Positions 13,901 through 52,200 of a stretch of 64,000 nucleotides of DNA are shown one piece after another. The notes below the pieces were generated by a model that did not search any database, had not been told where the DNA came from, and was given only the letters and a program-made list of their open reading frames with translations. The DNA is from Zootoca vivipara (lineage: Eukaryota). The translations under genes were made by a program, and so were the position numbers. Every line of letters starts with the position of its first letter. Within the stretch, counting starts at the first letter, position 1. The stretch spans positions 124,558,001 to 124,622,000 of the forward strand of contig NC_083276.1 of NCBI RefSeq assembly GCF_963506605.1. Reading direction: 5' to 3'.

Positions 13901-16900
13901 ACCGGAAGTCGCTTCTACGCATGTCCAGACATGCTCAAAAGCGACTTCCAGTGCCGCTCTGCCCAGATATGGGCAGAGCACCCAAAATTGGTTCTGCGCA
14001 TGTCCAGACATGCACAGAAGGAGCCTCCCTGGCAGGTACTGAAATCTGGGGGATTTACAGGATTTTTTCCCAATCTGGGCTGCCAGCGGGAAACGGTTTA
14101 AAATACGGGGGTTTCCCGTGAAAAACGGGAGACTTGGCAGCTATGCCAAGATGGTGTTTACAGGCCTTTGGGAACATTTGGTTCTATACACCAGCAGCTC
14201 TGATAGCTTTACTGTATGCCCTGATTGTAGAATGCCTTAATAATATAAAGCTTCTGAAAATAGGCTGAACTTAGCAACTGCTGAACCATCCATTTGACCT
14301 GAGTTGGAACAGCTGGCCAAACGCTTTGCCAACAGTGGGGTTTGCCCTCCAATAGCTTATCTACAACTCCCCATACCTAAAGGTTGTCCTAAGGCTACCA
14401 GTGTGGCAGGGCAGCAGTGCTTAACTGACCTCCCACCATCCATGTTGCTGTAGTGTCCTGGGAAGGAGAGGGGCAAGGTCAGTGCAGTTCAAACACACTC
14501 CAAAGCATATCAAACCTCTGAATCTGATACTGTTTTCCCTACAGAAAATGGCTGAAGATCAGACACCACAAACACTTGTTTACCATGGAGAAAGGACTGC
14601 ATGGATTTCTCCTGTAAATCTAAATGAACTTCTGGAACTGAAAGCCAAGCACCCCCAGGCACCTCTTGTAGTAGGCAATACTGCTGTGGGTATGTAGATT
14701 CCATACATAAGGGAGCAGCTCCCCCACTATGAGCTATTGCAGTGGTTCCCAACAGGTGGTCCGGGGACCCCCAGGGGTCCGCGAGCTATGCCAGAGGGGT
14801 CCGCAAGATGCTATTAGAATAAAAAATATATTAAATATATTTCGTATGATAACAGATTTTTTGTTTTGGCCGCTTCCTGCATGAGCAGAGTCTAGCGCAA
14901 AACTAGAATTAGATAGAGGCAGTAGTTCTGCTGTATGCCGTTAGGTGGCGCTTTACAAACACTACTGTTCTGCAAAGAGGCAGCGCGCACATTCTACTAA
15001 CGCTCACCTCCCCAAGATGCTTTGCGCGCGTCAGCTTCATTTGTGCGCTACTGCGCAGGTACCCTGTCTTCTCCATTCCCCTCCCTCCTCCCTGGCGCGC
15101 TCTGCCTCTTTGCAAAACAGTAGTGTTTGTAAACAAAGCGTTGTTTTTCGCGGAAGCTACAGTTCGCGTAGTTAAAAATGGACCGTTGGTTAAAAAGTGG
15201 TTCGTTAAAATGACAAAGGCCTACAGATGAAGAGGAAGAACTGTAAAAAACGTATAAATATAAAATATAAAAAGACTCTTAATTTGGCTCTCACTTTTTA
15301 ATTTTAGGATTAGGAATTAATGGGGGTCCTTGTCACAATAACGGCTCGATGAGGGGTCCTCGAGAAAATTTTGTTGGGAACCCCTGAGCTATTGAAAGTC
15401 AGCTCCTGGTTAAAGTTAGATGATTTGTAGTAGGTGATCTGTGTGTGGGCCGTGGTTTCATGGAGCTGCTGTGATTTATTCTTTCTGTAGAATTTCGGCA
15501 TATCCTGTTACTGTAATACCAGTATATGTATCACTGCACACCTTGAGATCCCCAAAGGAGCCTTGCTTTGTGGCCCTTCGTTAATCTGTGAACTCACTGT
15601 TGAAGTTTTTGTGATAAACTGCAGCTTTAAAGTAGACAATTAGTGAGTTAGCCAGAAGCTAAGTTAAACAAGGGAGTTTTTGCCTGGAGACAGGGAAGTA
15701 TGTTGACAGGCTGCTGATTGGTTTAAACTCCCCCTATAGGGAGACAGAGAAGCATGGTGACAGGCTGCTGATTGGTTTAAACTCCCCCTATAGGCAGCTT
15801 GGCACTAGCAGTTCTATGCTGAGGTAAAATGGAGCTGTTTAGAGAAGGAGTTTGTGAGGAGAGTTCTGAGAGTCTGTGTATATAGTAACTTGTACAAAGC
15901 AGCTTATAATAAAAGCTACTGTTCATCAAGTTCTGTTTCCTGAGTCCTGGATTACACCACCACACTATTGCGCTGCCTGCTAAATTCTCTGCTACACTTC
16001 AATAGGTTCTGGTGCCCAGGCTGTGGTTTCCAGGTTAGTGGTGTGCCAGTCAAGTCGTGGACGCAGGGGTTGTGAAGTCTCCCAGATTCTTAGCAAAGGA
16101 GATGGTGAGGACATGCCTGAGGTGATCAGTTGTAGAGTGTCGTGGTATTGATGCCAAGAGCTGATTGGTGGCAGACCCAAGTCTAGAGGACGACTGGACA
16201 CAGACAGTAGACACAGACATGCAGCATCCAGCTGCATTATCATTTGAGCGTCTGAACAATCATAACTATTTGTTGTGGTCCCAGAGGATTCAAGCTACGC
16301 TGCAGAGAGAAGGTCTTTGGAATGCTGTGTCTAAACCTCCTTCAAAGCCTGATGCTGATCATTTGGAGCGGGATGAGAGGGCAAGAGCTACTATTGTGTT
16401 GGCCATAGATGATATGCAGCTACCCCATGTGCGTGAGTGCAGTTCTGCAAAAGCTGTGTGGGTTGCTCTCCGGAATCTCCATGTGCGGGAGACGGCAGGT
16501 TCAAAGCTGTCTATACGTAAATCTCTATACAAATCGCTGCTTCAGCCGGGAGTGTCAATGCAGGACCATCTCCACGAACTGCAGATGAAGTTTGTGGCTC
16601 TTCTGGAGAGGGGTTGTAATTTACCAGAGGAAGAGAAAGTCTGCATTATTTTAAGTTCACTTCCTGACAGTTGGGACAATCTTGTTCTATCGCTGGAGTC
16701 AATGCGAGAACGGGATTTGACACTGGACTACGTCACTGGCAGGTTGCTTGAGGAGTGGCAGAAGCGGGTGTGCAGACAGTCGAAAACTTCTAGTGTTTTG
16801 ACAGGGAGTCGGTCTGTCAAAAACGCCAGCAGTTCTGAAGTGAAGCTGGTGTCTCAGCGTTCTTCAGAAGCTGTCAGCGAGGAGTCTGCATTTGCTGTGC

Positions 16901-19900
16901 GTCGCTGCTATAGATGTGGATCTTCAAAACATCTGCGTAAAGCATGTCCAGAAGTGGCAGGTTCTGAGGATCAGAGAAGTCGTCAGCAGAAGAAACGCGG
17001 CAAGTCAAAGCAGACAGTGCAGTACGTCGCCGCAGTGGTCAAGTGTCCAGAAGATGAAAAAAGCATCGAGTGGGTGGTCGATTCTGGCAGTTCAAGGCAT
17101 CTGGTTACATCAGAGGCTTTGTTTTCCAAGAAGTTGCCTAATCCACGCAAGCAGGTCGTGCTTGCAGATGGGAGAAAGTCTGAAGTGAAGTCTGCTGGAT
17201 CTGTCTTTGTCCCAAGTCTGCGCACACAGTTGGACAATGTTCTGTGTGTACCTTCATTGCAAAGCAATCTAATGTCTATATCATGTCTAATGCAGTCTGG
17301 TTTTTGTGTGCAGTTTAATGACAATTGCTGTGAGATACAGAAAGACGGTAAGACATTGGGAAGGGCTTTGCCAGAGGGTGGTGTGTTTGTGCTAAAAGAC
17401 AATGACAGAGTTGAGGATTCTGTCCTAGCTAGTGGTGTTTTACAGCAGAATTGTAAAAACAAGGCGTTACACCAGCATTGTTTACATTTATGGCACCGAC
17501 GCCTAGGTCATTCTAATTGGCGAAGTGTAATTAAAATGCCAAAGCTGAGTGATGGCTGTGAGCTGCAAAGTTGTGACAAGTTTTTAGACTGCAATGTGTG
17601 CAAGCAGGTTAAGTGTCACAGAGGTCCGTATCCTAGCAGCCAAAGAGTAAGTGAAAAGCCATTTCAGCTGGTACATGCCGATGTATGCGGTCCTTTCAAG
17701 CCTAGCAGGGGTAATTCTTGCTATGCACTGGCAATTATTGACGATGCTACCAGATTTTGCTGGGTTTATATGTTAAAGCACAAGGGGGAAGTTTTTTCTA
17801 AGTTTAAAAGCTGGGTTGCCTATGTAGAAAGGCAGTTCTCTTGCAAAGTCCAGAAACTTCAGTCTGATCGCGGAGGGGAGTTTTTGTCTAATGCGTTTCA
17901 GTCTTGGTTGGCAAGACGTGGAATTGGACATAGAAAAACTAATCCTCATTCTCCGGAAGAGAACGGGATTGCTGAGAGGAAGAATAGAGCGTTGCAAGAA
18001 ATGATGCAATCTATGCTAGCAGATTCTGGTTTATCTTTTGGTTATTGGGGAGAAGCCATTCTGAATGCGTGTTATATTCAAAATCGCTTATTTCATAGTT
18101 CAATAAGAACTACACCCTATTTCAAGTTGTTTGGGAAGAAGCCCAAAGTGGATCATTTGCGTGTGTTTGGGGTACAAGCTTGGGTACATGTGCCGAAGGC
18201 ACAACGCAGAAAAGGGGATGCCAAGGCACAACAACTTATTTTTGTTGGTTATCAAGATCAAGGAAAAGGGTGGCGGTTTGCAGTTGGTAACAACGGGATA
18301 ATAGTATCACGTAATGCAAATTTTTGTGAGCACTCTGGTTGGGAGAAAATCCATGCAAACACAGAGGTTTGGTTGCAATGTTCCAAGAGTTTTTCTGGCA
18401 ATAAAGAGCAGCCAGAAATTGTCAGCTCTGAGGGGGACGATGAAAAGCCTGAAATGTTTCCAAACTCTGAAGCCAGACAGATTTCGTCTACTTCAAAAGG
18501 TGTTTCTTCTGAAAGGGAGCAAGTGTCTGAGGGGGATGACAGTGCAGAGAAAAGTGATTTAACTCCCAGAAGGTCAGAGAGGAGAAACAAAGGAGTTCCA
18601 TCAGACCGTTATTCACCAGGTGTATCTCATGTTTGCCATGTAGCTGTAGAGCCACAAAGCTATAATGAGGTGTTTAAGTTACCAGAAGAACAGGTTTTGT
18701 GCTGGAAAGAAGCAATGCAAGAAGAAATGAATTCTCTGCAAGAGCACAAGGTGTTTACTTCTATGCCTCTACCCAAGGGTGCCAAGGTGGTAGGCAGTAG
18801 ATGGGTCTATAAACTGAAGCCCTTAGCTACTGGAGGTTTCAAGTATAAGGCACGGTTAGTAGCACAGGGTTTTTCCCAAAGACCTGGAGTGGATTTTGAT
18901 GAGGTGTTTGCTCCTACAGCGAGAAGCGAAAGCATGAGGCTGTTGCTTGCTATCGCTGCAAAGCATAAATTGGTGGCCAGTCATTTCGACATTCAAACAG
19001 CTTATTTAAATGCTGGTCTCACAGAGGAGCTGTATTTAGCTGAGCCACAAGGTTTTGAGACTAGGCCTGGGAATGTTTACAAGCTGCACAAAGCTTTATA
19101 CGGTTTAAAACAGTCTGCACGTAACTGGAACCGTTGTCTGGATGACACACTGGTTAAGCTTGGTTTTAAACATTGTGTGGCTGACAATTGTTTATATATA
19201 AGAGGGTCTGGAAATAATATAGAGTTCTGTTTAATTTTTGTGGATGACCTCTTATATGTGGCCAAGAGTAACAAACTGGTCAATGAGTTCTATACTCAGT
19301 TAGCAAAGAGGTTCAAGGTTAAAAACCTCGGCACAGTAAAAAATTATTTAGGAGTCGAAATGTGCCAGGCGGTTGATGGAAGCTATTTGCTCTGTCAAAG
19401 TAACAAAATCAAGCAGTTGTTGGTAAAATTTGGCATGCAGGATTGCAAAGGAGCCAAAACGCCAATGGAAACAGGTTTTGTTAAAGATTTAAATACAGAG
19501 CAAAGCCAAGAGTTCGAAAGTCCTGAACTATATCAATCTGCTATAGGTAGTCTGATGTACCTAGCACAATGGTCAAGACCTGACATCAGTTATGCTGTAG
19601 GCATCCTGAGCAGGCAGGTAGCAAAGCCAACAATTAATGCTTGGAAAGCGGTCAAAAGAGTTTTGCGTTATCTGAAACACACTGTTGACAGCACTCTAAG
19701 GATGAGTTCAACAGGGGAAGAGGTTTTACAGTGTTATACAGATAGCGACTGGGGAAATCTACCTGACAGGAAATCTGTAACTGGTATTGTCATCATGTTT
19801 GGGAAGTCGCTTGTTGGCTGGAAATCCAGAAAGCAAAGTTTGGTCAGTATGTCTTCAACAGAAGCCGAATACGCTGCGTTAAGTGAGTTGTGTAATGAGA

Positions 19901-22900
19901 TTGTGTTTTATAAACAGTTTTTGCTGGATTTGGGTTTTGAAAATGTTTGTCCTGTTAAAGTGTTTGTAGACAATCAAGCATGTATAACTCTGAGTGGGAC
20001 AGAACAGTTCAAAAGCAAAAGTAAACATATTCATTTGAAATACCAAAACGTCAGGTTCAATGTACAAAATAATACCATTGTGTGTGAATATGTGCAAAGT
20101 TCTGAAAATGTTGCTGACATCATGACAAAGCCGTTATCATTTGTAAATTGGAATATGCTTTGTCAGAGCATGGGTTTGGAGATCAAAGTTGGAGATAATA
20201 CTTTGTCTATGCTCAAAGACTAATTGCACTTTTGTAAGCTGTGAGGGGGTGTTGAAGTTTTTGTGATAAACTGCAGCTTTAAAGTAGACAATTAGTGAGT
20301 TAGCCAGAAGCTAAGTTAAACAAGGGAGTTTTTGCCTGGAGACAGGGAAGTATGTTGACAGGCTGCTGATTGGTTTAAACTCCCCCTATAGGGAGACAGA
20401 GAAGCATGGTGACAGGCTGCTGATTGGTTTAATGTCCCCCTATAGGCAGCTTGGCACTAGCAGTTCTATGCTGAGGTAAAATGGAGCTGTTTAGAGAAGG
20501 AGTTTGTGAGGAGAGTTCTGAGAGTCTGTGTATATAGTAACTTGTACAAAGCAGCTTATAATAAAAGCTACTGTTCATCAAGTTCTGTTTCCTGAGTCCT
20601 GGATTACACCACCACACTATTGCGCTGCCTGCTAAATTCTCTGCTACACTTCAATACTCACATGGTGGGAATTTTTTTCGTGGGGACAGCTTTTCATTTA
20701 AAATACTGTGCCAAGGAAACTCAGTTTGGCCCAGAATACACCCACACCTATACATATACAATACCTTTTACCACTTGTAAGTTTAGTCTCTGATTACTGT
20801 GGTACATTTTAATCTTATGGTAGCATATTTTTAAGTGCAGCATGTTTATGTTATTGGATTTTCTCTACTTTTAAAACATTTTCTAGATTGTTACTAGTTT
20901 TAGAGTGCTGCATACCCAATCTGTGAGTAGGAAAAGGGTTCACCATTTTTATAAACAAATATTTTCAAATGTTTAAATTGCAATCAAGCAACATTCCCCT
21001 TCCTCCTCATTTTCACTGTTATCTTCTACCCTTTAGGACCTGATATGAAGTTTAAAGGTGTATTTCATCCACTTATCATCTCGCCCACTAGAATATTGGA
21101 TCTGTATGTTGTGGAATGCACAGAAGATGGTCAGTAAACTTTGCTTTCTATCTTAGGGCCCTGCTAAAAGTTTTAAGAGCAGTGGGATCAGTTTGAAAGT
21201 GCACACTGTGCTCCATTAAACGATTATTTTTTGTCCCTTGATAAGCTCTGAAAAAGCAGCTCCAGCATGTGTTTTACTTTTGTGTTTTACTCTTTTCAGG
21301 ACTAATACTAGGAGCTGCGTGTAGCCTGACTGCAGTGAAAAACATCCTGACAGATGTGGTCTCAAAACTTTCAGCGGAGAAAACCAAGATATTCTCTGCT
21401 CTTTTGCAACAATTAAAAACTCTGGGAGGACAGCAGATCCGAAACGTGGCTGTATGTTTCCTTAATTGAAACATTTTTACAAATTTTACCTTGGATTACT
21501 GTTAACTGGGAAACAAATATTTTCCAGTTTAATTTGTTAACATTGATTTTGTAAGTGTTGCGTTTTTTGTGTTGAAACTGCATTTTTCCTCCCCTTTTTT
21601 GCTTTTAGTCCTTTGGAGGAAATATCATGAGCAGAAATTCAACATCTGACATCAATCCTATTCTAGCAGTTAGCAACTGTATCCTCAATGTGGCATCACA
21701 AGGTAGGACCAAATGCATTCTCAGTTTTCCATCACACTCAGTATTATCCAAACCTTCCAAATCTCTTTTATGTATTTGGAACACATTGCAGGTCCCTAGG
21801 AAGCCCACTGCAGGGGGCCCTTCAGGGAGGTAGGGATAAGGCTGTGGCTATGATGTTGCTTGTGAGGATATTTCTTTCTTTCTTCAATTGGCACAGGGAG
21901 TGTAAGCTGTGTAGTGCAATCCTATACATGTCTACTCAGAAGTAAGGCCCATTGAATTCAATGGGACTTTCCCTAGGTGAATTTGTATGGAGTTGCAGCC
22001 TTCAACATATTTTTGTTCTTTTACTCTAATCCCTTTCTCAATGAGGAACTCTAAGGTGCCAGTGTATTCTTTTTACAAATAAGCAAATATCTCAGTAAGG
22101 ACTGGAATGACGATCTTATTACAGTGGTACCTCTGGTTACGAACTTAATTCGTTCCAGAGGTCCGTTCTTAACCCAAAACCATTCTTGGTGCACTTTCGC
22201 TAATAGGGCCACCTGCTGCCACCGCGCCACTGGCATGTGACTTCCGCTCGCATCCTGGGGCAAAGTTCGCTACTAGGAGCATCTACTTCCGGGTTAGCGG
22301 AGCTCATTACCCAAAGTGTTTGTAAGGAGGAGGTTCCACTGTATTTCACTCTAAGGCCTTTGATAAATTCATTCATTCACTAGCTGAGTTTCCTGCTGCC
22401 TGTTTATCCTACTAAGGACATGTTTTTGATGCCCACATCAGCTTTCTTTTTGGGGTAAATAGCAGCTTTTGTGGACAAGAGAGGTGATTTTCATCAGGGC
22501 ACATCATGGCAGGGGGGGGGGACCCCTCCACCTGTAGTCCTAACCTGAATCTGGGTCTCCTGCGGTTGTGGTGCACACAACTGTGAAGACCCATTTAATG
22601 CAATGTGTAGTTTGGCACAGCAATGCTTTGTACGTTACAGTAAGAAAGGTGCAGTATGCTGTCTCACGAACCAGGCTTGACACTGCAATATCTCATGGGC
22701 AAGGCACACTTCTGTTATGATGAGAAGACTTGAGTGGCAAGTATGCACACGTTTCTGGTTGTTTGCATATGTTCTTTGCAAAGCAGCTGAAGAACATTGG
22801 AAGTTGCCTTATACTGAATTAGCTAGCTCAATGTTGGTAATACTGACAGGCAGCAACTCTTCAGGGTTTGGACAGGGCTCATTTGCAGCTCTACCAGGAG

Positions 22901-25900
22901 ATGCCAGGGACAGAATCTGGGACCTTCTGCATGCAAAGCAGATGCTCTACTAAGCTATGGCCCTAACTGTGTTACATCTTTGCACCCTTACAGGTTTAGT
23001 TAGATCTATTAAAATGCAAAGGTGTGAGACTCCCAAAAGCATTCTGACTTAGCTCTGGCACACTTCTTTAATAATTATAGAGGGTGAAGAAAAAGTGATT
23101 ACTCCTGCCACCTAAGCAAGAAACCCAATGGAATTGCTTTGAGTTTCTGCAATCTGTATGCATAACTAGTCCAAAAATTTCCATGCCAGCCAAGCCAAAA
23201 TGATTGCTCTGTATTCTCTTTATAGTGCTTAGTATTTATTTTCCATTTATATGGATGTTAATGTTCTCTGTTAGGGAGGCTGCGACAGATTCCTTTCAGT
23301 GACCTTTTTGCTGATGGACTTGGAAACAATACCCTGGAACCAGAGGAGATCCTAGTGTCTGTTAAAATCCCACATTCCAGGAAGGTCGGCAATCTTTCCT
23401 TTTCCTTTAAGATTGGTAATTGGGGGGAAATGTTAGATGATGATCCACAACGTGCATATTTTGGCAAATGTCAATGTTTTTGCAACATTCAGATTTGTTT
23501 GGGACTGGAACATGATACATTCATAAATACGTGAACAGTCTTAAAAGGGCAAAGTGCTTTCATAATGGGACAGCCAATCCTTGCCCAAAGTCTATGCCTC
23601 TTGCTTCAAGAGCTCCAGGGCCTTGAACCATCTGTAGTGTGGACCCTGCTCTATTCAGCTTGCTGTGAAACATTGGAATCAAACTGACTGCAGCATGTAG
23701 GGGAGAATATATAGCAGTAGCCTCCAAAGTTAATCGAAGGCACGAAGGTGGTCTGCAACTACTATAAGAGGAATACAGCCTTTTAAACTTTAAATATGAT
23801 CCAGGGGAGTATTAGAAAAAAACCTTTCTCCCAGTTTTCAATGGTCAAGTTGTGAGTGCTGCAGTGGAATGTCCTGTAATAAAAGGTGGCATTTCAAAAT
23901 GTTGTAGCCCAACTAATCTCTCTTTATTCTGATTCCTATTCCTTTTCAGGGTGAGTTTGTAGCAGCGTTTCGACAAGCTCCAAGGCGGGAAAATGCTTTA
24001 CCTATTGTTACAGCAGGGATGAGGATTGTCTTTGAAGAAGACTGCAACATCATTAGGGACTTCTGCATCTGTTACGGAGGTGTTGGCTTCACTACAGTTG
24101 CCGCCAAGCAAACATGCCAGGCACTCATTGGAAGGTACTATATGATTTCCTGTAGCATTGACGCCTCTTAGACTGAAAGCTCACCCCAATGGTAGCAATT
24201 TCCTAAGGAAGAGGCGTCTAGATAAACTCTTGAGTTCTCAAATACTAAAATTATATTGTTGCCGGATAAATGCTTGACATGCAGCAATTAAAAGACAAAT
24301 TTTTGTTTATATGAAATAGGTTGTGAGAATATTTCAGACCTTATTGTTCTTCAGAATTCCTTTTGGATTAAGCAACACAATGGAACTATTTTTACTTATC
24401 CGTTCTGTTCGTCTCCGATCGCACAAACTCACAAGTGGGCAAGCAGTTCAGTACCAAGAGTTAAAGAAGTTCTGCCATCATGTGAAATCATTTTGTATTT
24501 TCTGCATATTTTAAGCATGTTTAATTTATGATGTATTTTAAAAAAATTATGATGCATGCATGCAATGTTTAATGATTGTCAGTTGCAGTTATTTATCAAT
24601 CTGCATCTGTGCATATAAGTCAGCATATGCCGTTACTTCCGGCGCTCTTAGGGTAGACTCACGGAAATTAATGGGCCTAACTTAGGTAAGTTCATTAATT
24701 TCAGTGGGTCTGCACTGAATAAAACTTAGTTGAATACCATCCTTAGTTAATGAAGTTGTCACTGTTTGCGTTAACTAGATTTGGTGGACAGGCTATACTT
24801 ATTCTAGTCTAGTTTTATTTTGAAATGGAACTGAAGAAACACTTATTAAAAGAGTTGAAAAACATATGCAGCCTGACTCCTTGGTTCTAGCCCTCTATGA
24901 TTGTTCTGACCTCCAAATTTACCACAGTAGTTAGGAGGGCTAGCTACATAGGTCTTTAAAAAAATTAAACTGGAGTTTGTACAGTTTTAAACAGGAACAC
25001 CTTAGGATGGTGTTCTGTCAGAGGGTCGTCGTGGCTACTCTAGAGTAACTCCGCTTGAGTCCAGTTTGTCTTTCAAGACTTTTATTGTGCAAAGTATTTA
25101 CAGTGCAGAGATAGCTTAAAACATGACCTCTCAGTCCAAACCAGAATCTGGCAATGGCGTATGTCTGTTCCTACGCCAGCAAAGTAGTTGGGGCACCCCA
25201 AAACGCCTCCCCCTTGACCTGCGTCGTGGTGCTCTCCTTAACTCTTGTGCCGGAAGGAGCGATGCCCTCTCAGCCTCCTCCTGGTCAAAGCGGTGCAATG
25301 GTTCTCCAGTATCCTTGAGCCCTTGCCTACATCTCCCCTCCCCTGAGCTTTCTCATCGTTCCGCACGCTGGCTGCTCTCTCCCTCCGAGTCTCTCCCTCC
25401 CCCCCTGGCTGCTTCAAAACCATTGCTGCTCCCTGTGCTTGGCGAGGTGGACGTTAGGAGGGTGGGGGCTGGCTCCCTGTAGGGAGTCACCCTTACAGGT
25501 TCCTTTTTGTAAGCTGTATATTGTGCACATCTTCTTTAACCAAATTACAGAAATCAGATCCACTTACTTCATAGCAAAGGAAGATACTTAGAACTAAGGC
25601 ACCCCAAAATATAAATCCCCACTGGAATAGTGAATCTGCTTTGTTTCCTTGATGTACAATAACAGTGTGCTGCAGAATGCATGTTTTAATTCTTCCCCCC
25701 ATTAAGAATCTAATTTGTGTTTTACTGAGATAGCCCGTTAGAATAAAAACTTCATGATCAAAACTCTGCACACTATTTTTGTGCTAGTGTAAGGTGATTT
25801 TTTCCTCCCATGTATGCTTTGCTCTGTCTCCAAATGTGCTCTGTGGGGTTGAGTGAATCTCTCCCCCCCCCCCCGACAGATTTAGGGAGAGAGGGAGATT

Positions 25901-35252: not shown

Positions 35253-38200
35253 ATAGCTCATGAAGTTGTCTGTCAAAGCAGTGGAATTGGAGGGGATGGG
35301 AAATGAAATAATGAATAAGGCGGGTGAAACATCCATTCCATTTTCAGATGCTATTTGAAACACAGTCCCAGCTCCTGCCAACCTAGCAGTTCAAAAGCAT
35401 GTCAAGTGCAAGTAGATAAATAGGTACCGCTACAGTGGGAAGGTAAACGGTGTTTCCATGTGCTGCTCTGATTCGCCAGAAGCAGCTTTGTCATGCTGGC
35501 CACATGACCTGGAAGCTGTACGCCGGCTCCCTCGGCCAATAACGCAAGATGAGCGCGGCAAACCCAGAGTCGGTCACGACTGGACCTAATGGTCAGGGGT
35601 CCCTTTACCTTAATTGAAACACAGTCAACAAGCTTTTATCTGAAGAAGTGTGCATGCACACGAAAGCTCATACCAAAATAAAAACTTAGTTGGTCTTTAA
35701 GGTGCTACTGAAGGAATTTTTTTATTTTAACAAGCTTTTAGAAATTGAACTTATCTATTTTGATACTTAAAGTAGTACTGGATGGATTTAAATGCGAGGA
35801 AGGAATTGTCATAAAACTCTTGGCAAATGTAGAGGAGGTATATATGATTTGCCATACTGTGATGAGACCAACAGAGCCTCTGTTGAGGCAGTAGCACCGT
35901 GACTCATTGAAATAGATGACATAATGTCTATTGTAGCCCAAAGCAATGGGCTGTTGTGCAAGTGGTGCATATCTCAAAGAAAGGCTGTGTTTTTGATACA
36001 AAGCCACCATTTCAGATTTTAGTGGCAAGAGATATATTTCACTGGTGCTGAACATACTCAGCTAAGGATCAAAATTAAATTTCAAAAAGCTGTGTATGTT
36101 AAGAGGTTTTGTTGTGAATCCTTTTTCTGTACCTCATAAAATATAGCTGTGTTACCAAGGTGAGATCAATTGCCCTTATTCTTTTTTTAAGCAAGGGGAT
36201 TTATGCTTTTTGCCATACCTCCTAACTACATAGGCCGGGGGTAGCCAGTGTGATGCCTTCCAGAGATTTTGGACTACAATTCCCATCTCCATAAATGATA
36301 GTTAATGTTGGGATTTCACATTGCAAGCCAATGTTGGGGTTTGACATTGCAAGCCTGTTCATGTTTACTGAGAAGGAAGCCACGTTAAGGGACTGGGGCG
36401 TGTTCCCTGATTAAGTTTTTCATTTTGTTAAAAAGATAATATACTTACTAAGCACATTTAATTAAAATGTCTTATCTCCTCTGGATTGCAGCTATGATAA
36501 TAGCTATTCTCTGTGCATGTGCGCTTGGTAAGTGCGAGATCAGTACTGGAACTATTTCCTTAGATGGTAGCATATGAATAAAATGATGAAACATGCTCAA
36601 AGTTGGAAAGACAAGCATCCAAAGGATTACTGATGCATTTAGAATAGAATAGAATAGAATAGAATAGAATAGAATAATTTATTGGTCAAGTATCAACCAT
36701 ACTTGGATTTTGCTTCGACTACATTGCATTGCAATGTAAAGAAAAGAAAAAAGTACCTCATACAACCACTATTCCCCTCACAATACAACAGCACAGTGAA
36801 AAGACCCCATACCACCAACTGGCCTCCCTTCCACCCACAACTACAGATTCAACAATTTGATGGCACAAGGAAAAATGCTATTCCTGTGCCTAGACGTTTT
36901 TGTATATAGAGTCCTGTACCGACGTCTGGATGGGAGTAAATCAAACAAGTGATGGCCAGGATGCGAAGGGTCTACAGCAATTCTCTCCGCTCTCTTCCTG
37001 ACTCGAGTGGCATAAAGTGTCTCTATTGGAGGCAAACTAACACCAATTACCCTCTCTGCAGTTCTTACTGCTCGTTGAAGCCTCTTCTTATCCAGCTTAG
37101 AGGCTGTACCAATACCATACCAGACAGTAATGGAATTACAGAGGACAGTTTCAATAGTACCTCTATAGAATTGGACCAGCGATTAAATTGGGACAGATTA
37201 AATTTCCTTAGTTGTTGCAAGAAATACAATCTCTGGTGTACCTTTTTAATAATAATGTTGATGTTATCTGACCAATTCAATTTTTGAGAGATCATAGAGC
37301 CCAAGAACTTAAAGGTATTCCACACCAGAAACACTATAGAGTTCCTGGGGCAGTTTACAATTTTTTTAAAAAATGCAGTGCAATACAATATGATAGAAAC
37401 TTTGCCGGATTAAAAAGAACAGAATAGTGAAAACAGCAGCAGACTCCAGTAAATACAACCTCAAAGGAGCACAGTAGCTTAAAAGCACAACACCCAGCAG
37501 TTTAAAAAGATAAGCACTTGAACACTCTAAATAACATGGTTTTCTTGGAGCGAAACTAGATGGAATGTTACACACATTGTCTGTCATGAGGTCCCCACGC
37601 CCTTTTAAATAGCAGCTGGCAGAGAGCGAAGCTGCTGTTTCTTCCCCGGAGGTGCAAATCTGTAAATATTAGCTGGGCTGGTGCTGGAAAAAGCCACAGG
37701 GAAAGGGGTTAAGCCAAATCACCTCCACACACAATGGATACTATCAAAAAGAAAATGGACCTACAGATGGCAGCAGGCAGATCCACACCATACATTAAAA
37801 GCACATAAAGTGCCCATTTAAAGTGCTTGGCTCTCCCCTCCAAAGAATCCTGGGAGATGTAGTTTGCTAAGGGCACTGAAAGTTGTAGCTCTGTGATGGG
37901 GAAACTTCATTTCCCAGGGTTCTTTGGTGGAAGACTTGCTTTAAATGTGTGTTGAATGTTCTTTAAATATATGGCCCAACATGTTTAACATCACAACTAG
38001 TTTGGTCTTCAGAGTGGTGATAGTATAGCTCCCTTCCCATTAGATCCATTGCCTATAGCTCAAGTATATGGTAGTAGTTTATGTGGTAGCAATTATTATG
38101 AACATGGAGCATGGGTTTGGTTATTCTAGATTAGGCATCCCCAAACTTCGGCCCTCCAGATGTTTTGGACTACAATTCCCATCGTCCCTGACCACTGGTC

Positions 38201-46266: not shown

Positions 46267-49200
46267 CAGTATTCAGCTCCTGAAAGTGGGGGAAATCGGG
46301 TCAATGGCATTTGTTGATGTATCTTTGTGAATGCCACTGAACCCAAAAATACCTTTTCAAACAGAACTATGAGGTGTAACCCTTTTGTGTGTGCGTGTAA
46401 AGGTCTAGGTTGCTGTACTTAAAACAGAATATCGTACGTATTCATTTCTCATTCTAGGTTGCAAGCCGAGAATTAAAGATGCCAATGTCAAATATTCACT
46501 TCTGTGAAACAAGTACACAGACAGTCCCTAATGCATGTGCTTCAGTTGGATCAATGGGAACGGATGTCAATGGAATGGCAGTGAAGGTAAAATGTGATAT
46601 TAATCTTCTAGTTAATGCAAAATTCCAAGGTTCTGGCTTCTTGAAATATATTTATAGGAGCTTACTTCTGTTAAATGATGATGAAATGTATTGATTTTTT
46701 TGAAAGACTTTCATACTAAGTGCACAAAAACCCTCAGAAGAAAGCACCACTGAATTGCTGAACACAGGTGCCTGATTATGTTTTATGATTACAATCTTAA
46801 ATAATGTATAAATTATCACTACGTCCTACTTTCTCTTGTTCCCCATACCTGCTTTGAATTGAGCAACATTGTGTTTTGCAGAGAAGATACACGCTAAGCT
46901 GGAAAGTGCTGGGAGTTTCATAGATTCGTAGAATTGTAGAGTTGGAAGGGATCATTAGGGTCATCTAGCCCAACCCACTGCAATGCAATAATCTTTCACC
47001 CAATGTGAACCCATGACTCTGAGGTTAAGAGCCTCATGCTCTACCGACTGAGCCATCCTGCAGTGGATTTCAAACAGCTAGGTGGGAATGTATGAAGCAC
47101 AGGAACAGCATAGGAAACTGCCTTATACCAACTAAGACATCTGGCCCATTTAACTTAGTTTTGTCTACACTGACCTACCTAGCAATGCCAGGGATTGAAC
47201 CTGGGATGTTCCGCATGCAAAGCAGATGCTCCGCCACTGAGCTATGGTCCTTACCTGGTGAGCTACAGCACAGAGCATGCAACATCTGGTTAGTGCAAAT
47301 TTGCCCAATTGGTTGTAGAACAAAAGAGGAAGCCTTAATGAGGTTTAACTGATGCCCTTCCCCTTCTGGGCTGCAAAATTTAAGCTTCTCAGGACTGAAT
47401 GTGGAGGCTCTTGATTTTTTGTTGAAATAACCTCTTGGCAATGCCATAGACTAGTGTTTAATGACTCCTGTGGTGTAAGCAACAACCCAGCGGTATGGCA
47501 AAAATGGAACTCTTTAAATGTCTTACATGGAAACTTTTCTTCTTTGTGCTCCTCCCAATGTCATCAGGACGCCTGCCAGACCCTCCGGAAACATCTTGAG
47601 CCCATCATTAGACAGAACCCTAAGGGCACATGGAAAGAGTGGGTAAGAGTTGTTGTTTAGTCGTTTAGTCGTGTCCGACTCTTCGTGACCCCATGGACCA
47701 TAGCACGCCAGGCACTCCTGTCTTGCACTGCCTCCAGCAGTTTGGTCAAACTCATGTTGTAGAGTAGTTCTGTGGTTTCCATGGATTACCCTTTATATGG
47801 AAATTCCCAGGAGACATTTTATGTTTTTTTTTACTCCTTTCAGATCAGAAAGCATCCATTTCTTGCAGCATGGCTAAATATAGTGCTGCTGTATGTAAAA
47901 CTTTAGCAACTTGTAATTTTGCTCTCTATTCATGGCATTCTATAGTAAGATACAGTTACTAGTAATTTTGGTGTTATCAGTCTTTACTTTGTTTTGTTGG
48001 GGATCATTTTATATATTTGGATGTTTCTATTTTGAACACTGGCTATTGACCAAAACAATAACAGCAATTAAATAAGAAGCACCACAACAGACATTTGACT
48101 TGTATTAAATGTTATATGACTTTAGAGCCCAAGGCATAACCTCTTGTTTTAACTTGCCTAGCTTACCTCAACATGATTAAAGAAGGAAAATGGAGTATGA
48201 AGAATTTGTGTTTATGCAGGACTTTGCCCCTGCCTTTGGCAAGTTGCTTCATTCAAATTTGTTACTCACTTTTATAAAGGGGCTTGTTTTCTTTTTTACT
48301 GTTCCTTAAATTAATGCACTTAGTGCAGAGGAGAGGAATCCTTTTCACACCAAGAACTGCTTTCCCCTGTGGGAAGTGGTGTGCACAGCAATTGATATGA
48401 CTCTTACCTTTGTAAAGCCGCACAAAAGTCACAAAATTTACCATTGCAGCCACACAAAAGTCACAGATTTCTGCATCCCCTCCCACCGTTCTGCATGCAC
48501 ATTTCTCCGTACTTCATCTAGGCAAGCACAGGGTATTACCACAGCTGAAGGACACATTCTGGGGGGAACTTAGTCAATGGTTTGAATGGATAGATTAACA
48601 TTTAAGTTAAGAGCAGTAAGGAGATGTAATGAAGTAGACACATTTCCAGAAGCTTGGTACCGCTTTATGGTGCACACCACTAATAAAGAAAGCAGCTTTT
48701 TGCCACCACCAGGTGCTTCTCTTTTGCTGGAGGAAAAGACACGGCTACTAAGAATCAAGTACAGTTTGACTCTTCACTGAGCTAGTAAATCTGTGTGTGG
48801 TACTAGTGAGAGCTCATGTACTGGGAGGGATGCTTCTCCATAGAAGAAACAACTGCCTGCAACTATCATGTCAGGAAGAAGGCTAGGCCAAACTTCTTCT
48901 CCCTGAAACACAAGTTTTCTGGATGGATGGGATTGTTTTATTTGGGGAAGTATTCAGCCACCTGAGCTCCTACCAGCAGTCTTACTTCCTCAGTGAAAGC
49001 CTCTTCGTCACAGTTCTCAATGTGCAATGTTCCATTTCATCATTCAGTCAACTGGAAATATTATTTTTTTCAATTATATTTTATTGAGTTTCAACATTTT
49101 TAACATATACAATCAAAACACAACTTTGTTTTTTTTCTTTTTGTCAATTTCCCACCCCGTTTTCCATGGAGTTGTTGCTTCTCCCCTTCTGCTGCCCCCT

Positions 49201-52200
49201 ATAGTCTATCTATTAAATCATAGCCACAATATTATCACCTAATTCAGGCATCCCCAAACTGCGGCCCTCCAGATGTTTTGGCCTACAACTCCCATGATCC
49301 CTAGCTAACAGGACCAGTGGTCAGGGATGATGAGAATTGCAGTCCAAAACATCTGGAGGGCCGAAGTTTGGGGATGCCTGACCTAATTACTTCTGTTGGT
49401 CATAGCTCAAATCCTGCTCATGAGTTGATTGTCAAACTGGAAATATTAATAGGAATGTCTTGGTTTTAGCATGGCCATGGTATCTTTTTTTATACAATAT
49501 TGCTTTTTGAAGGAATAAACTTACTATGCTTGCTTGTTTTACAGGCCAAAGAAGCTTTTGAGCAGAGTATCAATCTGTCAGCTATAGGTTATTTCAGGTA
49601 AGGTAGAAAGGTAAAGGACCCCTGGACATTAACTCATGACTTCAAGAAGTGACTGTCAAAAGAGAATTAATGATTTGCATAACGAGGTAGCTACTGCAGG
49701 GATCATGAATGACTTGAGCTGATACTTTTAGTAGTTGCATATGCTGCTTAGACATAAGCATACAGAGAAAAGGGCATGTCATGTCTAGTCTTGTACATGA
49801 AGGTCCTGAAGGAGAATTTTAGCAGCAGAGTTTAAGATAATAATACAACAGATAACAGGGTCACATATATCTCAAAATTAATAATTCCAGTCCAACGCAG
49901 GGCCTTTATGTTAGCCCGACTGAACAGGTCACCTTCAAAGGTAGCCCCACGTAGAGCGCATTGCAGTAGTCCAAGCAGGAGATAACCAGAGCATGTACCA
50001 CTCTGGCAAGACAGTCCATGGGCAGGTAGGGTCTCAGCCTGCGTACCACATGGACCAAATTCAATCAAGTTTCAATCAAGTATTATTAATCCAAAGAGAA
50101 AACAATAAGAGAACCATATACAAGTGCTGACACAAGAGCCAAAATCAAACGTTAAACAGATAACATGTACAAATTAAAGGCAAACCAGTTAAGGCTTAGT
50201 CAATACATGCTCAAACCAAAAATACTCTGAATACAAGAAATTGGATATGTAAATGAGAGAACCTTTTGAAAAAACACCTGAGCATTGTGGCCTAAGCCAA
50301 GATAAGTGGTTTCATATAAATTTGAATGCACTAAACATAAAAGTACAAGGAGAACTACTGAAGAAGCCCGTCATATGGGCGAAACAGGCAAAAAAACGCC
50401 GGCAGCCTGTCTACTACCATTGACACCTCGTTCGACCTGCTGCCACTTGCTGACCGCTAGATAGCCTCAAAGACTATAAAGACTGGTTTGCCTTTAATTT
50501 GTACATGTTATCTGTTTAACGTTTGATTTTGGCTCTTGTGTCAGCACTTGTATATGGTTCTCTTATTGTTTTCTCTTTGGATTAATAATACTTGATTGAA
50601 ACTTGATTGAATTTGGTGCCTTTGCGTGCTGCTTGTTTTATTTTGGACTTTTGAAGAAATTGGCAGCATTAGCCCATCATCTCTGTTTTTGCGTACCACA
50701 TGGAGCTGGTAGACAGCTGCTCTGTACACAGAATTGACCTGCACGTCCATGGACAGCTGTGAGTCCAAAATGACTCCCAGGCTGCACACCTGGTCCTTCA
50801 GGGGCACACTTAACCCTTTCACAACTGTGGCCTACTGTTTTGCACTCTCTAATGAACCATGCACACTGATGGCACTAAATTGATAATTTTTTCAGGGAGG
50901 ATCCAGAGGATCCTTCTGTGAATGAAAGGCACTAAGATCCAGCAGGTCGTCCTGCTGGAGAAAGATGCATTTTTTTAACCAGTTGGAGAAAGAGGAAGGC
51001 CACCCTGTGCTGCTTCCGATATGGTTCCAGAGACATTCCCAACTCTCCAAAGCAACTTTTCAGGCAAAACTCACCTGCTCTCCCCCTCCCCATGCCACCC
51101 CTTGGGCTTTCTCATGATCTGCATTCTGCTCACAGTAACTTTGGATCCAACCCACTGATCAAGTGGAAGGAATTATTGGTCACATTCAGAAATTTGTACA
51201 TTTGGTTGAAAGTGCTGTCAGTGAGTCTGTAGGGTTTTTTTATGTTTCTGTAAATGAAAAGTATTTCTGAATCAGAGAACTCAGATCAGCGCTGCATTCT
51301 GACTGCATCAAGGGAGAATGTAATGTGGCAACGATGAGTAGTAGATGATACAGCTTTAAATGAGGAAAAGCCAAATTCATAGATCTATTAATGGGTATTA
51401 GCCATTATAGGCAACAGAAGCAGTATTGACTGGCTTTGGGGGAGAAGAATGTTGGGGGCTTTTACCTACATCTCCTGTTGGTGGGGTTCCTGGAGGCCTG
51501 GCCACTTCCAGAAACAGAATGCTGAATTAGATGAACATTTGATCTGATCAACAGACCTGCTGCTATGTTCTTAAACAGCATGATGCATTATCAGAGCAAA
51601 TCTCACATAGCTCCACTGTCATGACTGATTGTAACAACTGAGGGTCCAGCACATCATTGTGATTGTGAGGGTCTTTATTGCTATTTTCCCCCTTGTCTCT
51701 TCTATTGTTGTTCCCATGCCTGCAAGCATCCCTTACTCCCCAACATACTTTGTTGCTTCTTGCAGAGGTTATGAGACATACATGGATTGGGAGAAAGGAG
51801 AAGGCCACCCATTTGAATATTTTGTTTTTGGGGCTGCCTGCACAGAGGTTGAAATAGACTGCCTGACTGGAGACCACAAGGTAAACTGCCAGGTGTCACT
51901 TACAGCTAGTGCAAAAAGCACAGTCAAGTTCCTGTGTAACTAATGAAAGGCTCTTGTGTTTTCTTTGTCGTATTCAGTCTAACAGCTGTTTGCAGTGGAC
52001 AGCAATAAATCCTGCTGCTTTCTACAAAGCACATCTAATTGGAAATGGGTGCCGGATACATAGTGGTTTCTTGTGTGAATCGAGTTTAACCTCTCCTCCT
52101 TCCTCCTCATGTGACTTCAGTAATCCATGAGCTGCTGCTATGGCACATGCATGGCAACTCTGAACGTGAATTCATCCTGGCACTTGTGCTGCAGTAGCCA

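What the first reader, a model, noticed from the sequence alone, without database searches (positions are those of the whole stretch)
50055..50689. Young non-coding insertion: perfect 136-bp inverted repeat enclosing a sense-strand hammerhead ribozyme in AOX intron 30
Seen: a 635-bp segment flanked by a 15-bp TSD interrupts an older L2. Arms 50054-50189 and 50482-50617 are exact reverse complements. The loop holds a second imperfect hairpin (50193-50298) and a complete hammerhead core: CUGAAGA, 5-bp stem II, GAAA, 6-bp stem III and a GUC site, with predicted cleavage after 50411. No credible ORF is present. Known: Penelope-like elements and retrozymes carry hammerheads, and Penelope copies often have inverted terminal segments. 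Many Penelope-associated hammerheads are minimal, whereas this one has a long stem III. Inference: this is a recent non-autonomous ribozyme-bearing retroelement, possibly of an undescribed family. In the AOX pre-mRNA it could self-cleave the intron and form 136 bp of perfect dsRNA, a potential ADAR/Dicer substrate. Caveat: stem I pairing is weak (2 bp next to the core, then an internal loop).
Basis: partly seen in the sequence, partly recalled or inferred. Interest (0 to 1): 0.78.

Follow-up and report, generated by a model that had tools for sequence, protein, structure and literature searches.

The report
Fold-back Penelope-type insertion with hammerhead motif
A young 635-base mobile-element insertion in a lizard gene intron has the usual head-to-head layout of Penelope-type retrotransposons and carries a ribozyme-like motif with an unusually complete third helix, but nothing yet shows that the motif cuts RNA.

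Summary
A 635-bp insert (50055-50689) lies between perfect 15-bp target duplications, and its first 135 bases are the exact reverse complement of 50482-50616. It contains one complete hammerhead-type motif, with predicted cut after 50411.

The inverted repeat is most likely a by-product of integration. An inverted 5'-truncated copy plus a direct copy with a one-sided "tail" (50618-50689) inside one target duplication is the published Penelope-like element (PLE) layout.

The motif has PLE hammerhead hallmarks: an extra base between A9 and G10.1, a G10.1-C11.1 pair and a 6-bp helix II. It shares the string CUGAAGA-A-G with a resident minimal PLE hammerhead elsewhere in this window. It differs in having a 6-bp helix III hairpin.

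In public contigs the family is multi-copy in this species and absent, at 88% likeness or more, from a close relative. Some copies appear to carry introns that this copy lacks.

Not shown:
- any RT/GIY-YIG parent element;
- any cleavage, since the few RNA reads come from other copies and run through the site;
- any RNA editing;
- independent confirmation of the assembly.

Rfam finds no hammerhead here, but it also misses the resident one.

This scan has already met the fold-back PLE layout elsewhere in this genome. Verdict: a new member of a known kind, of modest interest.

The parts
50040..50054 (.). Left copy of the 15-bp target-site duplication. Base 50054 also pairs with 50617, giving 1 nt of overlap between target and element.
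50055..50189 (-). Inverted, 5'-truncated partial copy (left arm). It is the exact reverse complement of 50482-50616. Its outer end corresponds to 50617/50616, that is, to a start 72 nt inside the 3' end of the direct copy.
   Evidence: layout as described in PMC8557442 and PMC11167929
50190..50689 (+). Direct copy of the element: 500 nt, non-coding, with its 3' end at 50689. The + orientation is inferred from GT..AG intron signals in other copies and from the highest family depth lying at the 3' end.
   Evidence: (depth table, loose ends)
50192..50298 (+). Imperfect internal hairpin. An exon-exon junction inferred from other copies (50241|50242) lies inside it.
   Evidence: z -3.4; loose ends
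50322..50323 (+). Inferred exon-exon junction. In organism A, one contig runs on after 50322 with letters starting GTAAGTA, and 2 contigs reach 50323 from letters ending CAG. A second junction of the same kind lies at 50241|50242, where one contig runs on with GTAAGTA.
   Evidence: table 7 (run X1 only, 1-2 contigs each)
50343..50424 (+). Hammerhead-type domain (type I topology).
- Stem I: 50343-50357 with 50412-50424, bulged.
- Core: C3-A9 at 50358-50364.
- Extra A at 50365.
- Helix II: 50366-50380.
- G12-A14 at 50381-50383.
- Helix III: 50384-50410 (6 bp, 15-nt loop).
- C17 at 50411, with the predicted cut after it.
   Evidence: hallmarks compared with PMC4209133
50401..50444 (+). Competing hairpin (GGCAGC 50401-50406 with GCUGCC 50439-50444). 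It takes over the 3' strand of helix III once more of the RNA is present.
   Evidence: helix III pair probability 0.64-0.74 in 91 nt, 0.001 in the 292-nt loop
50482..50617 (+). Right arm of the inverted repeat, part of the direct copy.
50618..50689 (+). One-sided 72-nt 'tail', present only at the right end. It contains a small hairpin and has the highest summed family depth.
   Evidence: tail concept
50690..50704 (.). Right copy of the 15-bp target-site duplication.
49913..50856 (-). Host repeat interrupted by the insertion. It is a LINE-like ORF remnant and an extremely abundant repeat piece in organisms A and B.

Best explanation
This is a very young insertion made by a Penelope-like-element (PLE) type of integration.

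How it formed (inferred): a non-coding, spliced RNA of a lineage-specific multi-copy family was reverse-transcribed from both nicked DNA strands of one target.
- One strand primed at the RNA's outer start site (50689) and copied 500 nt.
- The other strand primed at an inner start site (50617) and copied 135 nt.
- Joining the two cDNAs gave an inverted partial copy, a direct copy and a one-sided 72-nt tail inside a single 15-bp target duplication.
The perfect 135/136-bp inverted repeat is therefore a by-product of integration, not a functional module.

The hammerhead: the RNA carries the family's hammerhead, which is of the PLE kind (extra base after A9, G10.1-C11.1 pair, 6-bp helix II). Its usual palindromic ACGU 'mini helix III' is opened by a 23-nt insert that makes a 6-bp hairpin.

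What is shown and what is inferred:
- Shown: the anatomy, the multi-copy status, the absence from a close relative at 88% likeness or more, and the intronic sense position.
- Inferred: the PLE machinery, the two start sites, and homology of the motif to PLE hammerheads.

In this intron the motif is most likely inert or weakly active. The template RNA of this very copy was not cut at 50411, since the copy extends 222 nt upstream of that site.
For: Layout:
- The perfect TSD and perfect inverted arm abut each other, and the tail is at one end only.
- Published PLE features match. [quoted passage not shown]
- An anole PLE protein cleaves and extends both strands. It starts reverse transcription at two internal RNA sites, and the tail is the stretch between them (PMC11167929, parts 1-2 of the text).

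Hammerhead:
- It is the only site in 2 x 64 kb that fits the full descriptor. Shuffles give 0.03 sites per window, and 0 of 300 shuffles give stems this long.
- Only 2 of the 34 CUGANGA heptamers in the window are followed by a helix II of at least 6 bp and GAAA (shuffles: 0.047 per window).
- The other such site is a 90-nt TSD-flanked minimal-hammerhead insertion at 35639-35728. It has the same CUGAAGA-A-G string.
- In a 91-nt context the minimum-energy fold is the three-helix hammerhead.

Family:
- Summed contig depth over the 10 element bins is 2300-24282 in X1, against about 28-30 on unique flanks.
- In X2 it is 298-2205, against about 104-129.
- Depth is highest at the 3' tail, as expected with 5' truncation.
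- In organism B it is 0 in 8 of 10 bins and 1.2 and 4.5 in the other two. Organism B's unique flanks are covered at depth 10-15 and differ by 8 of 343 and 25 of 455 letters.

Introns: contigs of organism A run on after 50241 and after 50322 with letters starting GTAAGTA, and reach 50323 from letters ending CAG. PLEs are the retroelements known for keeping introns, with an intron in the pLTR upstream of the hammerhead.

Earlier notes of this scan call the 'inverted copy plus one-sided tail in one TSD' layout textbook PLE in this genome (unchecked notes).
Against: - No RT or GIY-YIG ORF is linked to the family. There is no ORF in the insert. Pfam was blank on 10 of 10 neighbouring ORFs.
- A search of 1.84 billion protein representatives with the ORF over the hammerhead gave only a repeat artefact.
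- The tail is 72 nt, not 30-40.
- The target is not AT-rich, whereas the anole element prefers ATT.
- There are no direct pLTR repeats.
- Tail depth is higher than the bin before it. That does not look like an 'optional' tail, although the tool warns that this depth is no copy number.
- Rfam hammerhead models give nothing at E up to 10, even on 101 nt. This is weak evidence, because the resident minimal hammerhead is missed too.
- The 91-nt fold is no more stable than shuffles: z -0.8, and 45 of 200 shuffles fold as well.
- In longer context helix III is out-competed.
- The intron evidence rests on 1-2 contigs per junction in one run.
- The two copy-number proxies differ about tenfold between X1 and X2.
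Confidence: 0.6

Rival explanations
1. A non-PLE retroposon, such as a SINE or a LINE 3' end, inserted by ordinary target-primed reverse transcription. The 5' inversion would come from twin priming at a random internal site, and the hammerhead would be a chance motif.
For: - The 15-bp TSD and 5' inversion are also what LINE twin priming gives (recalled from the L1 literature, no call).
- There is 1 nt of target/RNA overlap at the inner priming site.
- No PLE protein is linked to the family.
- Rfam is blank.
- The scan has read hundreds of windows of this genome, so some chance motifs are expected. At 0.03 per window, that is about 23 in 779 windows.
Against: - A chance motif would have to fall inside this 635-bp insert. 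The expectation is 0.0003 for 2 x 635 nt.
- It would also have to carry the PLE-specific extra base, the G10.1-C11.1 pair and a 6-bp helix II.
- It would further have to share CUGAAGA-A-G with the resident PLE hammerhead.
- There is no poly(A) or simple-repeat tail.
- Intron-bearing copies are unusual for LINE- or SINE-type families.
Confidence: 0.2
2. A retrocopy family of a spliced host transcript (a lncRNA or a gene's UTR) mobilised in trans. PLEs are reported to do this occasionally. On this reading the element is not a transposon lineage of its own.
For: - Contigs with intron-like continuations at 50241 and at 50322/50323 could be the source gene, and this copy could be its processed form.
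- There is no ORF.
Against: - Summed depth of about 80-850 times the flank in X1 is high for a processed pseudogene.
- Depth rising toward a fixed 3' end and the PLE-type hammerhead point to an element that supplies its own recognition signals.
- Absence at 88% likeness or more in a relative whose flanks differ by only 2-5% would be odd for a conserved host gene.
Confidence: 0.1
3. The hammerhead is an efficient monomeric ribozyme that cuts the host pre-mRNA intron after 50411. The 135-bp arms form dsRNA that is edited or diced, with consequences for the host gene.
For: - The core is complete with three helices, and the stable helix III removes the need for dimers.
- The insert is in sense orientation in the intron of an XDH/AOX-family gene.
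- The whole insert folds at -305.9 kcal/mol, with 0 of 20 shuffles as stable.
Against: - (table 6) lists no pile of read starts or ends.
- 6 of 7 RNA reads at 50410-50412 carry their differences away from their ends, so they cross the site.
- 16 of 16 RNA reads at 50390 show another copy's letter.
- Places with A>G (12) and T>C (12) are not in excess over C>T (16) and G>A (10) in the RNA run.
- Helix III has pair probability 0.001 once the 292-nt loop is present.
- This copy was itself made from uncut RNA.
- The PLE hammerheads tested so far cut poorly or need protein.
- A cut inside an intron need not affect the spliced mRNA (general knowledge).
Confidence: 0.1
4. The inverted arm is an assembly artefact. 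PLE fold-backs are known to trouble assemblies.
For: - PMC8557442 notes that such structures cause problems in shotgun assemblies.
- No listed contig bridges either junction or the arms (table 8). k-mer contigs cannot span a 135-bp perfect inverted repeat.
Against: - The left TSD copy abuts the inverted arm and the right TSD copy abuts the tail, 15 of 15 identical.
- Removing the whole unit restores the host reading frame. A spurious inversion would not create this.
Confidence: 0.03

Closest known systems
Penelope-like elements of the Penelope/Poseidon and Neptune clades in lizards, for example Poseidon of Anolis carolinensis (PAc), PMC11167929
   Same: - An inverted 5'-truncated copy beside a direct copy within one target duplication.
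- A one-sided tail explained by two reverse-transcription start sites.
- A hammerhead upstream of the start sites, with an ATG (50375-50377) inside helix II. [quoted passage not shown]
- 5' truncation, and no poly(A).
   Different: - No RT/GIY-YIG ORF or pLTR tandem is seen.
- The distance from predicted cut site to 3' end is 206 or 278 nt, against about 85-92 nt plus a 30-40-nt tail in PAc.
- The 3' region is non-coding, whereas PAc starts reverse transcription inside its ORF.
- The target is not AT-rich.
- There is no sequence similarity to the resident minimal-hammerhead insertion beyond the core.
Minimal PLE hammerheads (min-HHR; Cervera and de la Pena 2014, PMC4209133), including the copy at 35639-35728 of this window
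   Same: - Type I order.
- CUGAAGA core, an extra base between A9 and G10.1, a G10.1-C11.1 pair, and a 6-7-bp helix II.
- Deleting 50386-50408 leaves GAAAC-GUC with the palindromic ACGU typical of min-HHRs.
   Different: - Min-HHRs have no helix III, or one of 1-2 bp, and are thought to act as dimers.
- This motif has a 6-bp helix III closed by a 15-nt loop, so it could fold as a monomer.
- Its helix II is not palindromic.
PLE hammerheads of fungi and protists with a large helix III (PMC4209133)
   Same: A stable helix III in a PLE-associated type I hammerhead, which allows monomeric activity in those organisms.
   Different: - Those come from endonuclease-deficient, telomere-associated PLEs of other kingdoms.
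- No recognisable stem I/II tertiary contacts are reported for them.
- No homology was tested here.
Non-LTR retrozymes of animals (PMC7229834; bioRxiv 10.64898/2026.07.22.740005)
   Same: Non-coding, non-autonomous, hammerhead-bearing, and related to PLE pLTRs. They are reported present in 4 of 5 reptile genomes sampled.
   Different: Retrozymes are tandem repeats in which two ribozymes excise a unit that circularises. Here there is one motif and no tandem repeat.
Twin-priming 5' inversions of LINE-1 (recalled, no call)
   Same: An inverted 5' segment joined to a direct 3' segment within one TSD, made by priming from both nicked strands.
   Different: - In L1 the inverted piece usually comes from RNA upstream of the direct piece. 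Here it duplicates a stretch that the direct copy also holds.
- There is no poly(A) and no TTTT/A target.

Membership tests
Penelope-like element (PLE) insertion | An ORF with a telomerase-like RT and a GIY-YIG endonuclease, in the copy or in a demonstrable parent | tested here: not met
   No ORF over 56 aa lies in the insert, and the 3' 315 nt are closed in all frames. Pfam was blank on 2 of 2 element ORFs and on 10 of 10 neighbouring ORFs. The protein library search gave no PLE protein. A parent elsewhere in the genome could not be searched.
Penelope-like element (PLE) insertion | An inverted 5'-truncated copy directly upstream of the direct copy, within one target duplication | tested here: met
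   135 of 135 bases are exact reverse complements, and the TSD is 15 of 15 identical. The definition is from PMC8557442.
Penelope-like element (PLE) insertion | A short tail extension at one end only, equal to the stretch between two internal RT start sites | tested here: inconclusive
   A one-sided 72-nt extension (50618-50689) is present. It is about twice the published 30-40 nt. Whether other copies end at 50617 and 50689 could not be seen.
Penelope-like element (PLE) insertion | Pseudo-LTRs formed by partial tandem copies | tested here: not met
   There are no direct repeats in or around the insert other than the TSD.
Penelope-like element (PLE) insertion | Retention of spliceosomal introns in genomic copies | tested here: inconclusive
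   Loose ends start with GTAAGTA after 50241 and after 50322, and end with CAG before 50323. Each rests on 1-2 contigs of run X1. This copy lacks those introns.
PLE-type minimal hammerhead (min-HHR) | [quoted passage not shown] | tested here: met
   Sequence reading and descriptors. The criteria are from PMC4209133.
PLE-type minimal hammerhead (min-HHR) | No helix III, or one of 1-2 bp, with palindromic 15.2-16.2 positions and loop 3 (dimer-dependent) | tested here: not met
   Helix III has 6 bp with a 15-nt non-palindromic loop. The closing A-C...G-U would be palindromic only if the 23-nt insert were absent.
Hammerhead ribozyme (Rfam RF00163, RF00008, RF02275-RF02277) | A match to the curated covariance models | tested here: not met
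   No hammerhead model matched at E up to 10 on 1101 nt or on 101 nt, and none at gathering score in the window. Control: the resident min-HHR at 35640 is missed as well, so this test has little weight for PLE-type motifs.
Hammerhead ribozyme (Rfam RF00163, RF00008, RF02275-RF02277) | Site-specific self-cleavage after H17 | not testable with these tools
   The RNA reads are few (7 at the site, 6 crossing it) and come from other copies.
Non-LTR retrozyme | Tandem repeats, each with a hammerhead, giving circular RNA units | tested here: not met
   There is one motif in the insert and no tandem or direct repeats.
LINE-1-type twin-primed insertion | A poly(A) tail at the 3' end and a T-rich nick site | tested here: not met
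   The 3' end reads ...CTCTGTTTT directly against the TSD, which is TGCGTACCACATGGA.

The most novel reading that the evidence does not exclude
A lizard PLE lineage has turned its dimer-dependent minimal hammerhead into a self-sufficient monomeric ribozyme by inserting a 23-nt hairpin at helix III. This lineage burst (or arrived by horizontal transfer) after the split from a relative only 2-5% diverged. Copies such as this one place an active ribozyme, caged in 135 bp of perfect dsRNA, on the sense strand of host introns.
Probability: 0.12. Interest if true: 0.6.

Novelty: new member of a known kind. Interest (0 to 1): 0.3.

Why it matters
If the reading is right, this is a clean, datable example of PLE integration by extension of both DNA strands from two RNA start sites. 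That mechanism has so far been shown only in vitro for one anole element.

It also hints that animal PLE hammerheads are not all of the helix-III-less, dimer-dependent kind. A monomerically foldable variant would be a convenient substrate for asking what PLE ribozymes are for.

For the host gene it probably matters little. The insert lies in an intron and adds a long perfect hairpin. That hairpin could attract editing or dicing, but no data here show it.

Tried and rejected
- Rfam at three scales gave no hammerhead. I do not count this against the motif, because the control on the resident minimal hammerhead at 35640 also failed.
- Other copies in the window: none. The best other BLAST hits are 16 nt long with E 1.4.
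- Earlier notes of this scan, searched by sequence: blank.
- Metagenome scan with an exact 28-mer of the motif: 0 matches. I did not use the second scan that is allowed after a blank.
- Protein route to a parent element. The 52-aa ORF over the hammerhead was searched against 1.84 billion representatives. The single hit, P0001, is a translated 65-aa tandem repeat with 11 of 30 identities per unit. Its score is inflated by repetition, so I rejected it. Because no near-identical ORF exists in that library, I did not spend a homologous-protein search.
- Pfam on 10 larger ORFs across the window, among them the nearest to the insert: 0 of 10 hit. There is no PLE, LINE or other TE domain next to the insert.
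- Empty-site test in organism B. A contig with the exact 650-bp skip exists (depth 12.2). The same joint also occurs in 1 contig of X2 and in 67 RNA reads, because the host repeat is present at summed depths of 10^5-10^6. I therefore do not take it as the orthologous empty site.
- Copy number. The X1 and X2 ratios differ about tenfold and the tool warns against reading depth as copy number. I say only 'multi-copy'.
- Literature. Searches for Zootoca vivipara + Penelope + transposable elements found 0 papers. A squamate / Penelope / horizontal-transfer search listed nothing specific (listing only). Lunse et al. 2017 on PLE hammerhead dimers is not held.
The supplementary hammerhead alignments of PMC4209133 and Figs S1-S2 of PMC11167929 might show reptile PLE hammerheads with a helix III, or tails longer than 40 nt. 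Either would lower the novelty.
- Papers seen:
  - PMC11167929: parts 1-2 of the text.
  - PMC4209133, PMC8557442 and PMC6765202: passages found by term.
  - bioRxiv 10.64898/2026.07.22.740005: abstract and part 1 of the Results.
- The species name 'common lizard' comes only from earlier notes. Run and organism names were coded.
Full report
**What is there**

The 635-bp segment 50055-50689 is bounded by two identical 15-bp copies of TGCGTACCACATGGA, at 50040-50054 and 50690-50704. Its first 135 bases are the exact reverse complement of 50482-50616. With base 50054 of the target duplication the match is 136 of 136.

Removing the segment and one duplication copy restores an open minus-strand LINE-like reading frame across the site. 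The segment is therefore a single insertion into an older repeat. I did not test that this repeat is 'L2'.

No other copy of the insert lies in the window. The insert has no ORF longer than 56 aa, and Pfam finds nothing in 2 of 2 of its ORFs tested.

Exons with molybdopterin-cofactor-binding domains lie on the + strand at 42.2-46.7 kb, in profile order. The insert therefore sits in a downstream intron of an XDH/AOX-family gene, in sense orientation. AOX versus XDH, and the intron number, were not checked.

**The hammerhead motif**

- CUGAAGA at 50358-50364;
- helix II at 50366-50371/50375-50380;
- GAAA at 50381-50384;
- helix III at 50384-50389/50405-50410, with a 15-nt loop;
- GUC at 50409-50411.

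There is an extra A (50365) between A9 and G10.1. Stem I, beyond its internal loop, has nine more pairs in bulged blocks, 50343-50352 with 50414-50424.

A descriptor requiring the core, helix II of at least 4 bp, GAAA, helix III of at least 4 bp and a non-G at position 17 finds exactly one site in both strands of the 64-kb window, this one. In 300 dinucleotide-preserving shuffles it finds 0.03 sites per window, and none with stems this long. I wrote the descriptor after seeing the motif, and the scan has read 779 windows of this genome. Some chance motifs are therefore expected genome-wide. The expectation of one falling inside this particular 635-bp insert is about 0.0003.

Thermodynamically the picture is mixed:
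- In a 91-nt context the minimum-energy fold is the three-helix hammerhead, at -18.3 kcal/mol. That is not better than shuffles (z -0.8).
- Once the downstream GCUGCC (50439-50444) is present, a competing hairpin takes the 3' strand of helix III. Its pair probability then falls from 0.64-0.74 to 0.001.

**Rfam and its control**

No Rfam hammerhead model matches at E up to 10, on 1101 nt or on 101 nt.

A looser scan of the window (CUGANGA, 0-1 base, helix II, GAAA) finds only two sites. Shuffles give 0.047 per window for helix II of at least 6 bp.

The second site, at 35640, lies in a 90-nt insertion (35639-35728) with its own 12-bp duplication. It is the kind of short Penelope hammerhead insertion that earlier notes of this scan describe as very common in this genome. 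Rfam misses that one too, so the Rfam blank carries little weight.

Both sites read CUGAAGA-A-G.

**Comparison with published PLE biology**

Cervera and de la Pena (PMC4209133, passages) list as consistent features of PLE minimal hammerheads:
- the G10.1-C11.1 pair;
- an enlarged helix II;
- palindromic 15.2-16.2 positions, with no helix III or a tiny one.

The present motif has the first three. If 50386-50408 were absent it would read GAAAC-GUC, with the palindrome ACGU. It can therefore be described as a PLE-type minimal hammerhead with a 23-nt hairpin at the helix III position. The same paper reports large helix III variants only for fungal and protist PLEs.

For the layout:
- Craig et al. 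(PMC8557442, passages) describe PLE insertions as highly 5'-truncated. They often have an inverted 5'-truncated copy directly upstream and a 30-40-bp tail at only one end.
- Frangieh et al. (PMC11167929, parts 1-2) show that an anole PLE protein nicks and extends both DNA strands. It starts reverse transcription at two internal RNA sites, and the stretch between them is the tail.

This insert fits that scheme. The direct copy ends at 50689. The inverted copy starts at the position matching 50617, and the 72 nt between them are present at one end only.

Two earlier follow-ups in this genome reached the same 'textbook PLE layout' verdict for other insertions. I derived the reading from the papers, and I note the agreement without counting it as independent evidence.

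**Evidence from public runs (runs chosen)**

Runs X1 and X2 (organism A) match the unique flanks without a single difference: 0 of 396 and 0 of 468 letters in X1, and 0 of 328 and 0 of 472 in X2.

| Run | Unique flanks | The 10 element bins (50090-50679) |
|---|---|---|
| X1 (organism A) | about 28-30 | 2300-24282 |
| X2 (organism A) | about 104-129 | 298-2205 |
| X17 (organism B) | 10-15 | 0 in 8 bins; 1.2 and 4.5 in two |

- The family is multi-copy in organism A. Depth is highest in the 3' tail bin, as expected for a 5'-truncating retroelement read on the + strand. The tool warns that this depth is not a copy number.
- In X17 the flanks differ from the window by 8 of 343 and 25 of 455 letters. 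At 88% likeness or more, the family is therefore absent from a close relative.
- Variants among copies include G for A at 50390, a 1-nt deletion at 50391, and a 3-nt deletion at 50411-50413 (1105.5 of 4250 depth in X1). The last shortens the CUACUAC run after the cut site.
- None of the listed differences falls in the core boxes. However, 56 further differences were not shown.
- Three loose ends in X1 look like splice signals. One contig each continues after 50241 and after 50322 with letters beginning GTAAGTA. Two contigs reach 50323 from letters ending CAG.
- If these are introns, this copy derives from spliced RNA while other copies keep the introns. Intron retention is a peculiarity reported for PLEs, whose pLTR can hold an intron just upstream of the hammerhead. 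The evidence is thin, at 1-2 contigs per junction in one run.

**RNA**

In the RNA run X21 (about 6% of the run read), depth over the insert is at most 8 per bin, on either mate orientation.
- At 50390, 16 of 16 reads carry G. These reads come from other copies, not from this intron.
- At 50410-50412, 6 of 7 reads carry internal deletions, so they run through the predicted cut site.
- No pile of starts or ends is listed.
- Places with A>G (12) and T>C (12) are not in excess over C>T (16) and G>A (10).

This gives no support for cleavage or editing, but the power is very low. One further argument comes from the anatomy. The direct copy extends 222 nt upstream of the predicted cut, so the RNA that templated this insertion was uncut. 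This agrees with the in-vitro finding that unprocessed RNA is the main substrate.

**What I could not do**

- A metagenome scan with a 28-mer found nothing.
- A search of 1.84 billion protein representatives with the ORF over the motif gave only a translated tandem repeat, which I reject.
- Consequently no RT/GIY-YIG parent is shown. The two fixed 3' ends are inferred from one insertion. Conservation of the core among copies is untested. The assembly of the fold-back is supported only by the internal logic of the target duplication.

**Age (inference)**

There are zero differences in 135 arm pairs and 15 duplication pairs. At assumed rates of 1-2 x 10^-9 per site per year, this gives a 95% upper bound of about 5-10 million years. 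Gene conversion between the arms could make the insertion look younger than it is.

**Verdict**

The best explanation (about 0.6) is a young PLE-type fold-back insertion of a lineage-specific, non-coding family that carries a PLE-type hammerhead with a full helix III. The inverted repeat is a by-product of integration.

The rivals are:
- a non-PLE retroposon with twin priming and a chance motif (0.2);
- a trans-mobilised spliced host transcript (0.1);
- a functionally active intronic ribozyme and dsRNA (0.1, an add-on to the main reading rather than an alternative);
- an assembly artefact (0.03).

It is a new member of a known kind. The helix III variant is the only part that could interest a ribozyme specialist, and it needs a cleavage assay.

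Noticed in passing
window 35627-35740: A 90-nt insertion (35639-35728) lies between 12-bp duplications AACAAGCTTTTA. It starts at the C3 of a minimal hammerhead: CUGAAGA, an extra A, a palindromic 7-bp helix II, then GAAAGCUC. This looks like the short Penelope hammerhead insertion class that earlier notes report as abundant in this genome. Rfam does not detect it.
   Followed up: partly
window 49913-50054 and 50690-50856: The host repeat piece around the insertion has summed contig depths of 10^5 to 1.9 x 10^6, against about 28 on unique sequence, in organism A and likewise in organism B. It is also well represented in RNA reads on both orientations. It has sharp edges at 49927/49928 and 50821, where most contigs continue differently from the window.
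   Followed up: no
window 11065-11133, 22905-22964, 47180-47251: Three tRNA-like matches at Rfam gathering score (30.5-36.1 bits), two of them on the minus strand. They look like heads of tRNA-derived SINEs rather than tRNA genes. This was not checked further.
   Followed up: no
window 16165-20223: A 1352-aa ORF on the + strand. I did not examine it.
   Followed up: no
window 49999 (RNA run X21): 73 RNA reads leave the window's sequence after 49999 with one identical 30-letter continuation (agreement 1.0). This suggests one strongly expressed other copy of the host repeat, or a junction in it.
   Followed up: no
window 50352-50413 (family variants): A subfamily is marked by an inserted A behind 50352, G at 50390, a 1-nt deletion at 50391 and a 3-nt deletion at 50411-50413. 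It makes up roughly a quarter to just under a half of X1 depth at these four places. It supplies nearly all RNA reads over the motif: 7 of 7, 16 of 16 and 6 of 7 reads at the respective places.
   Followed up: partly
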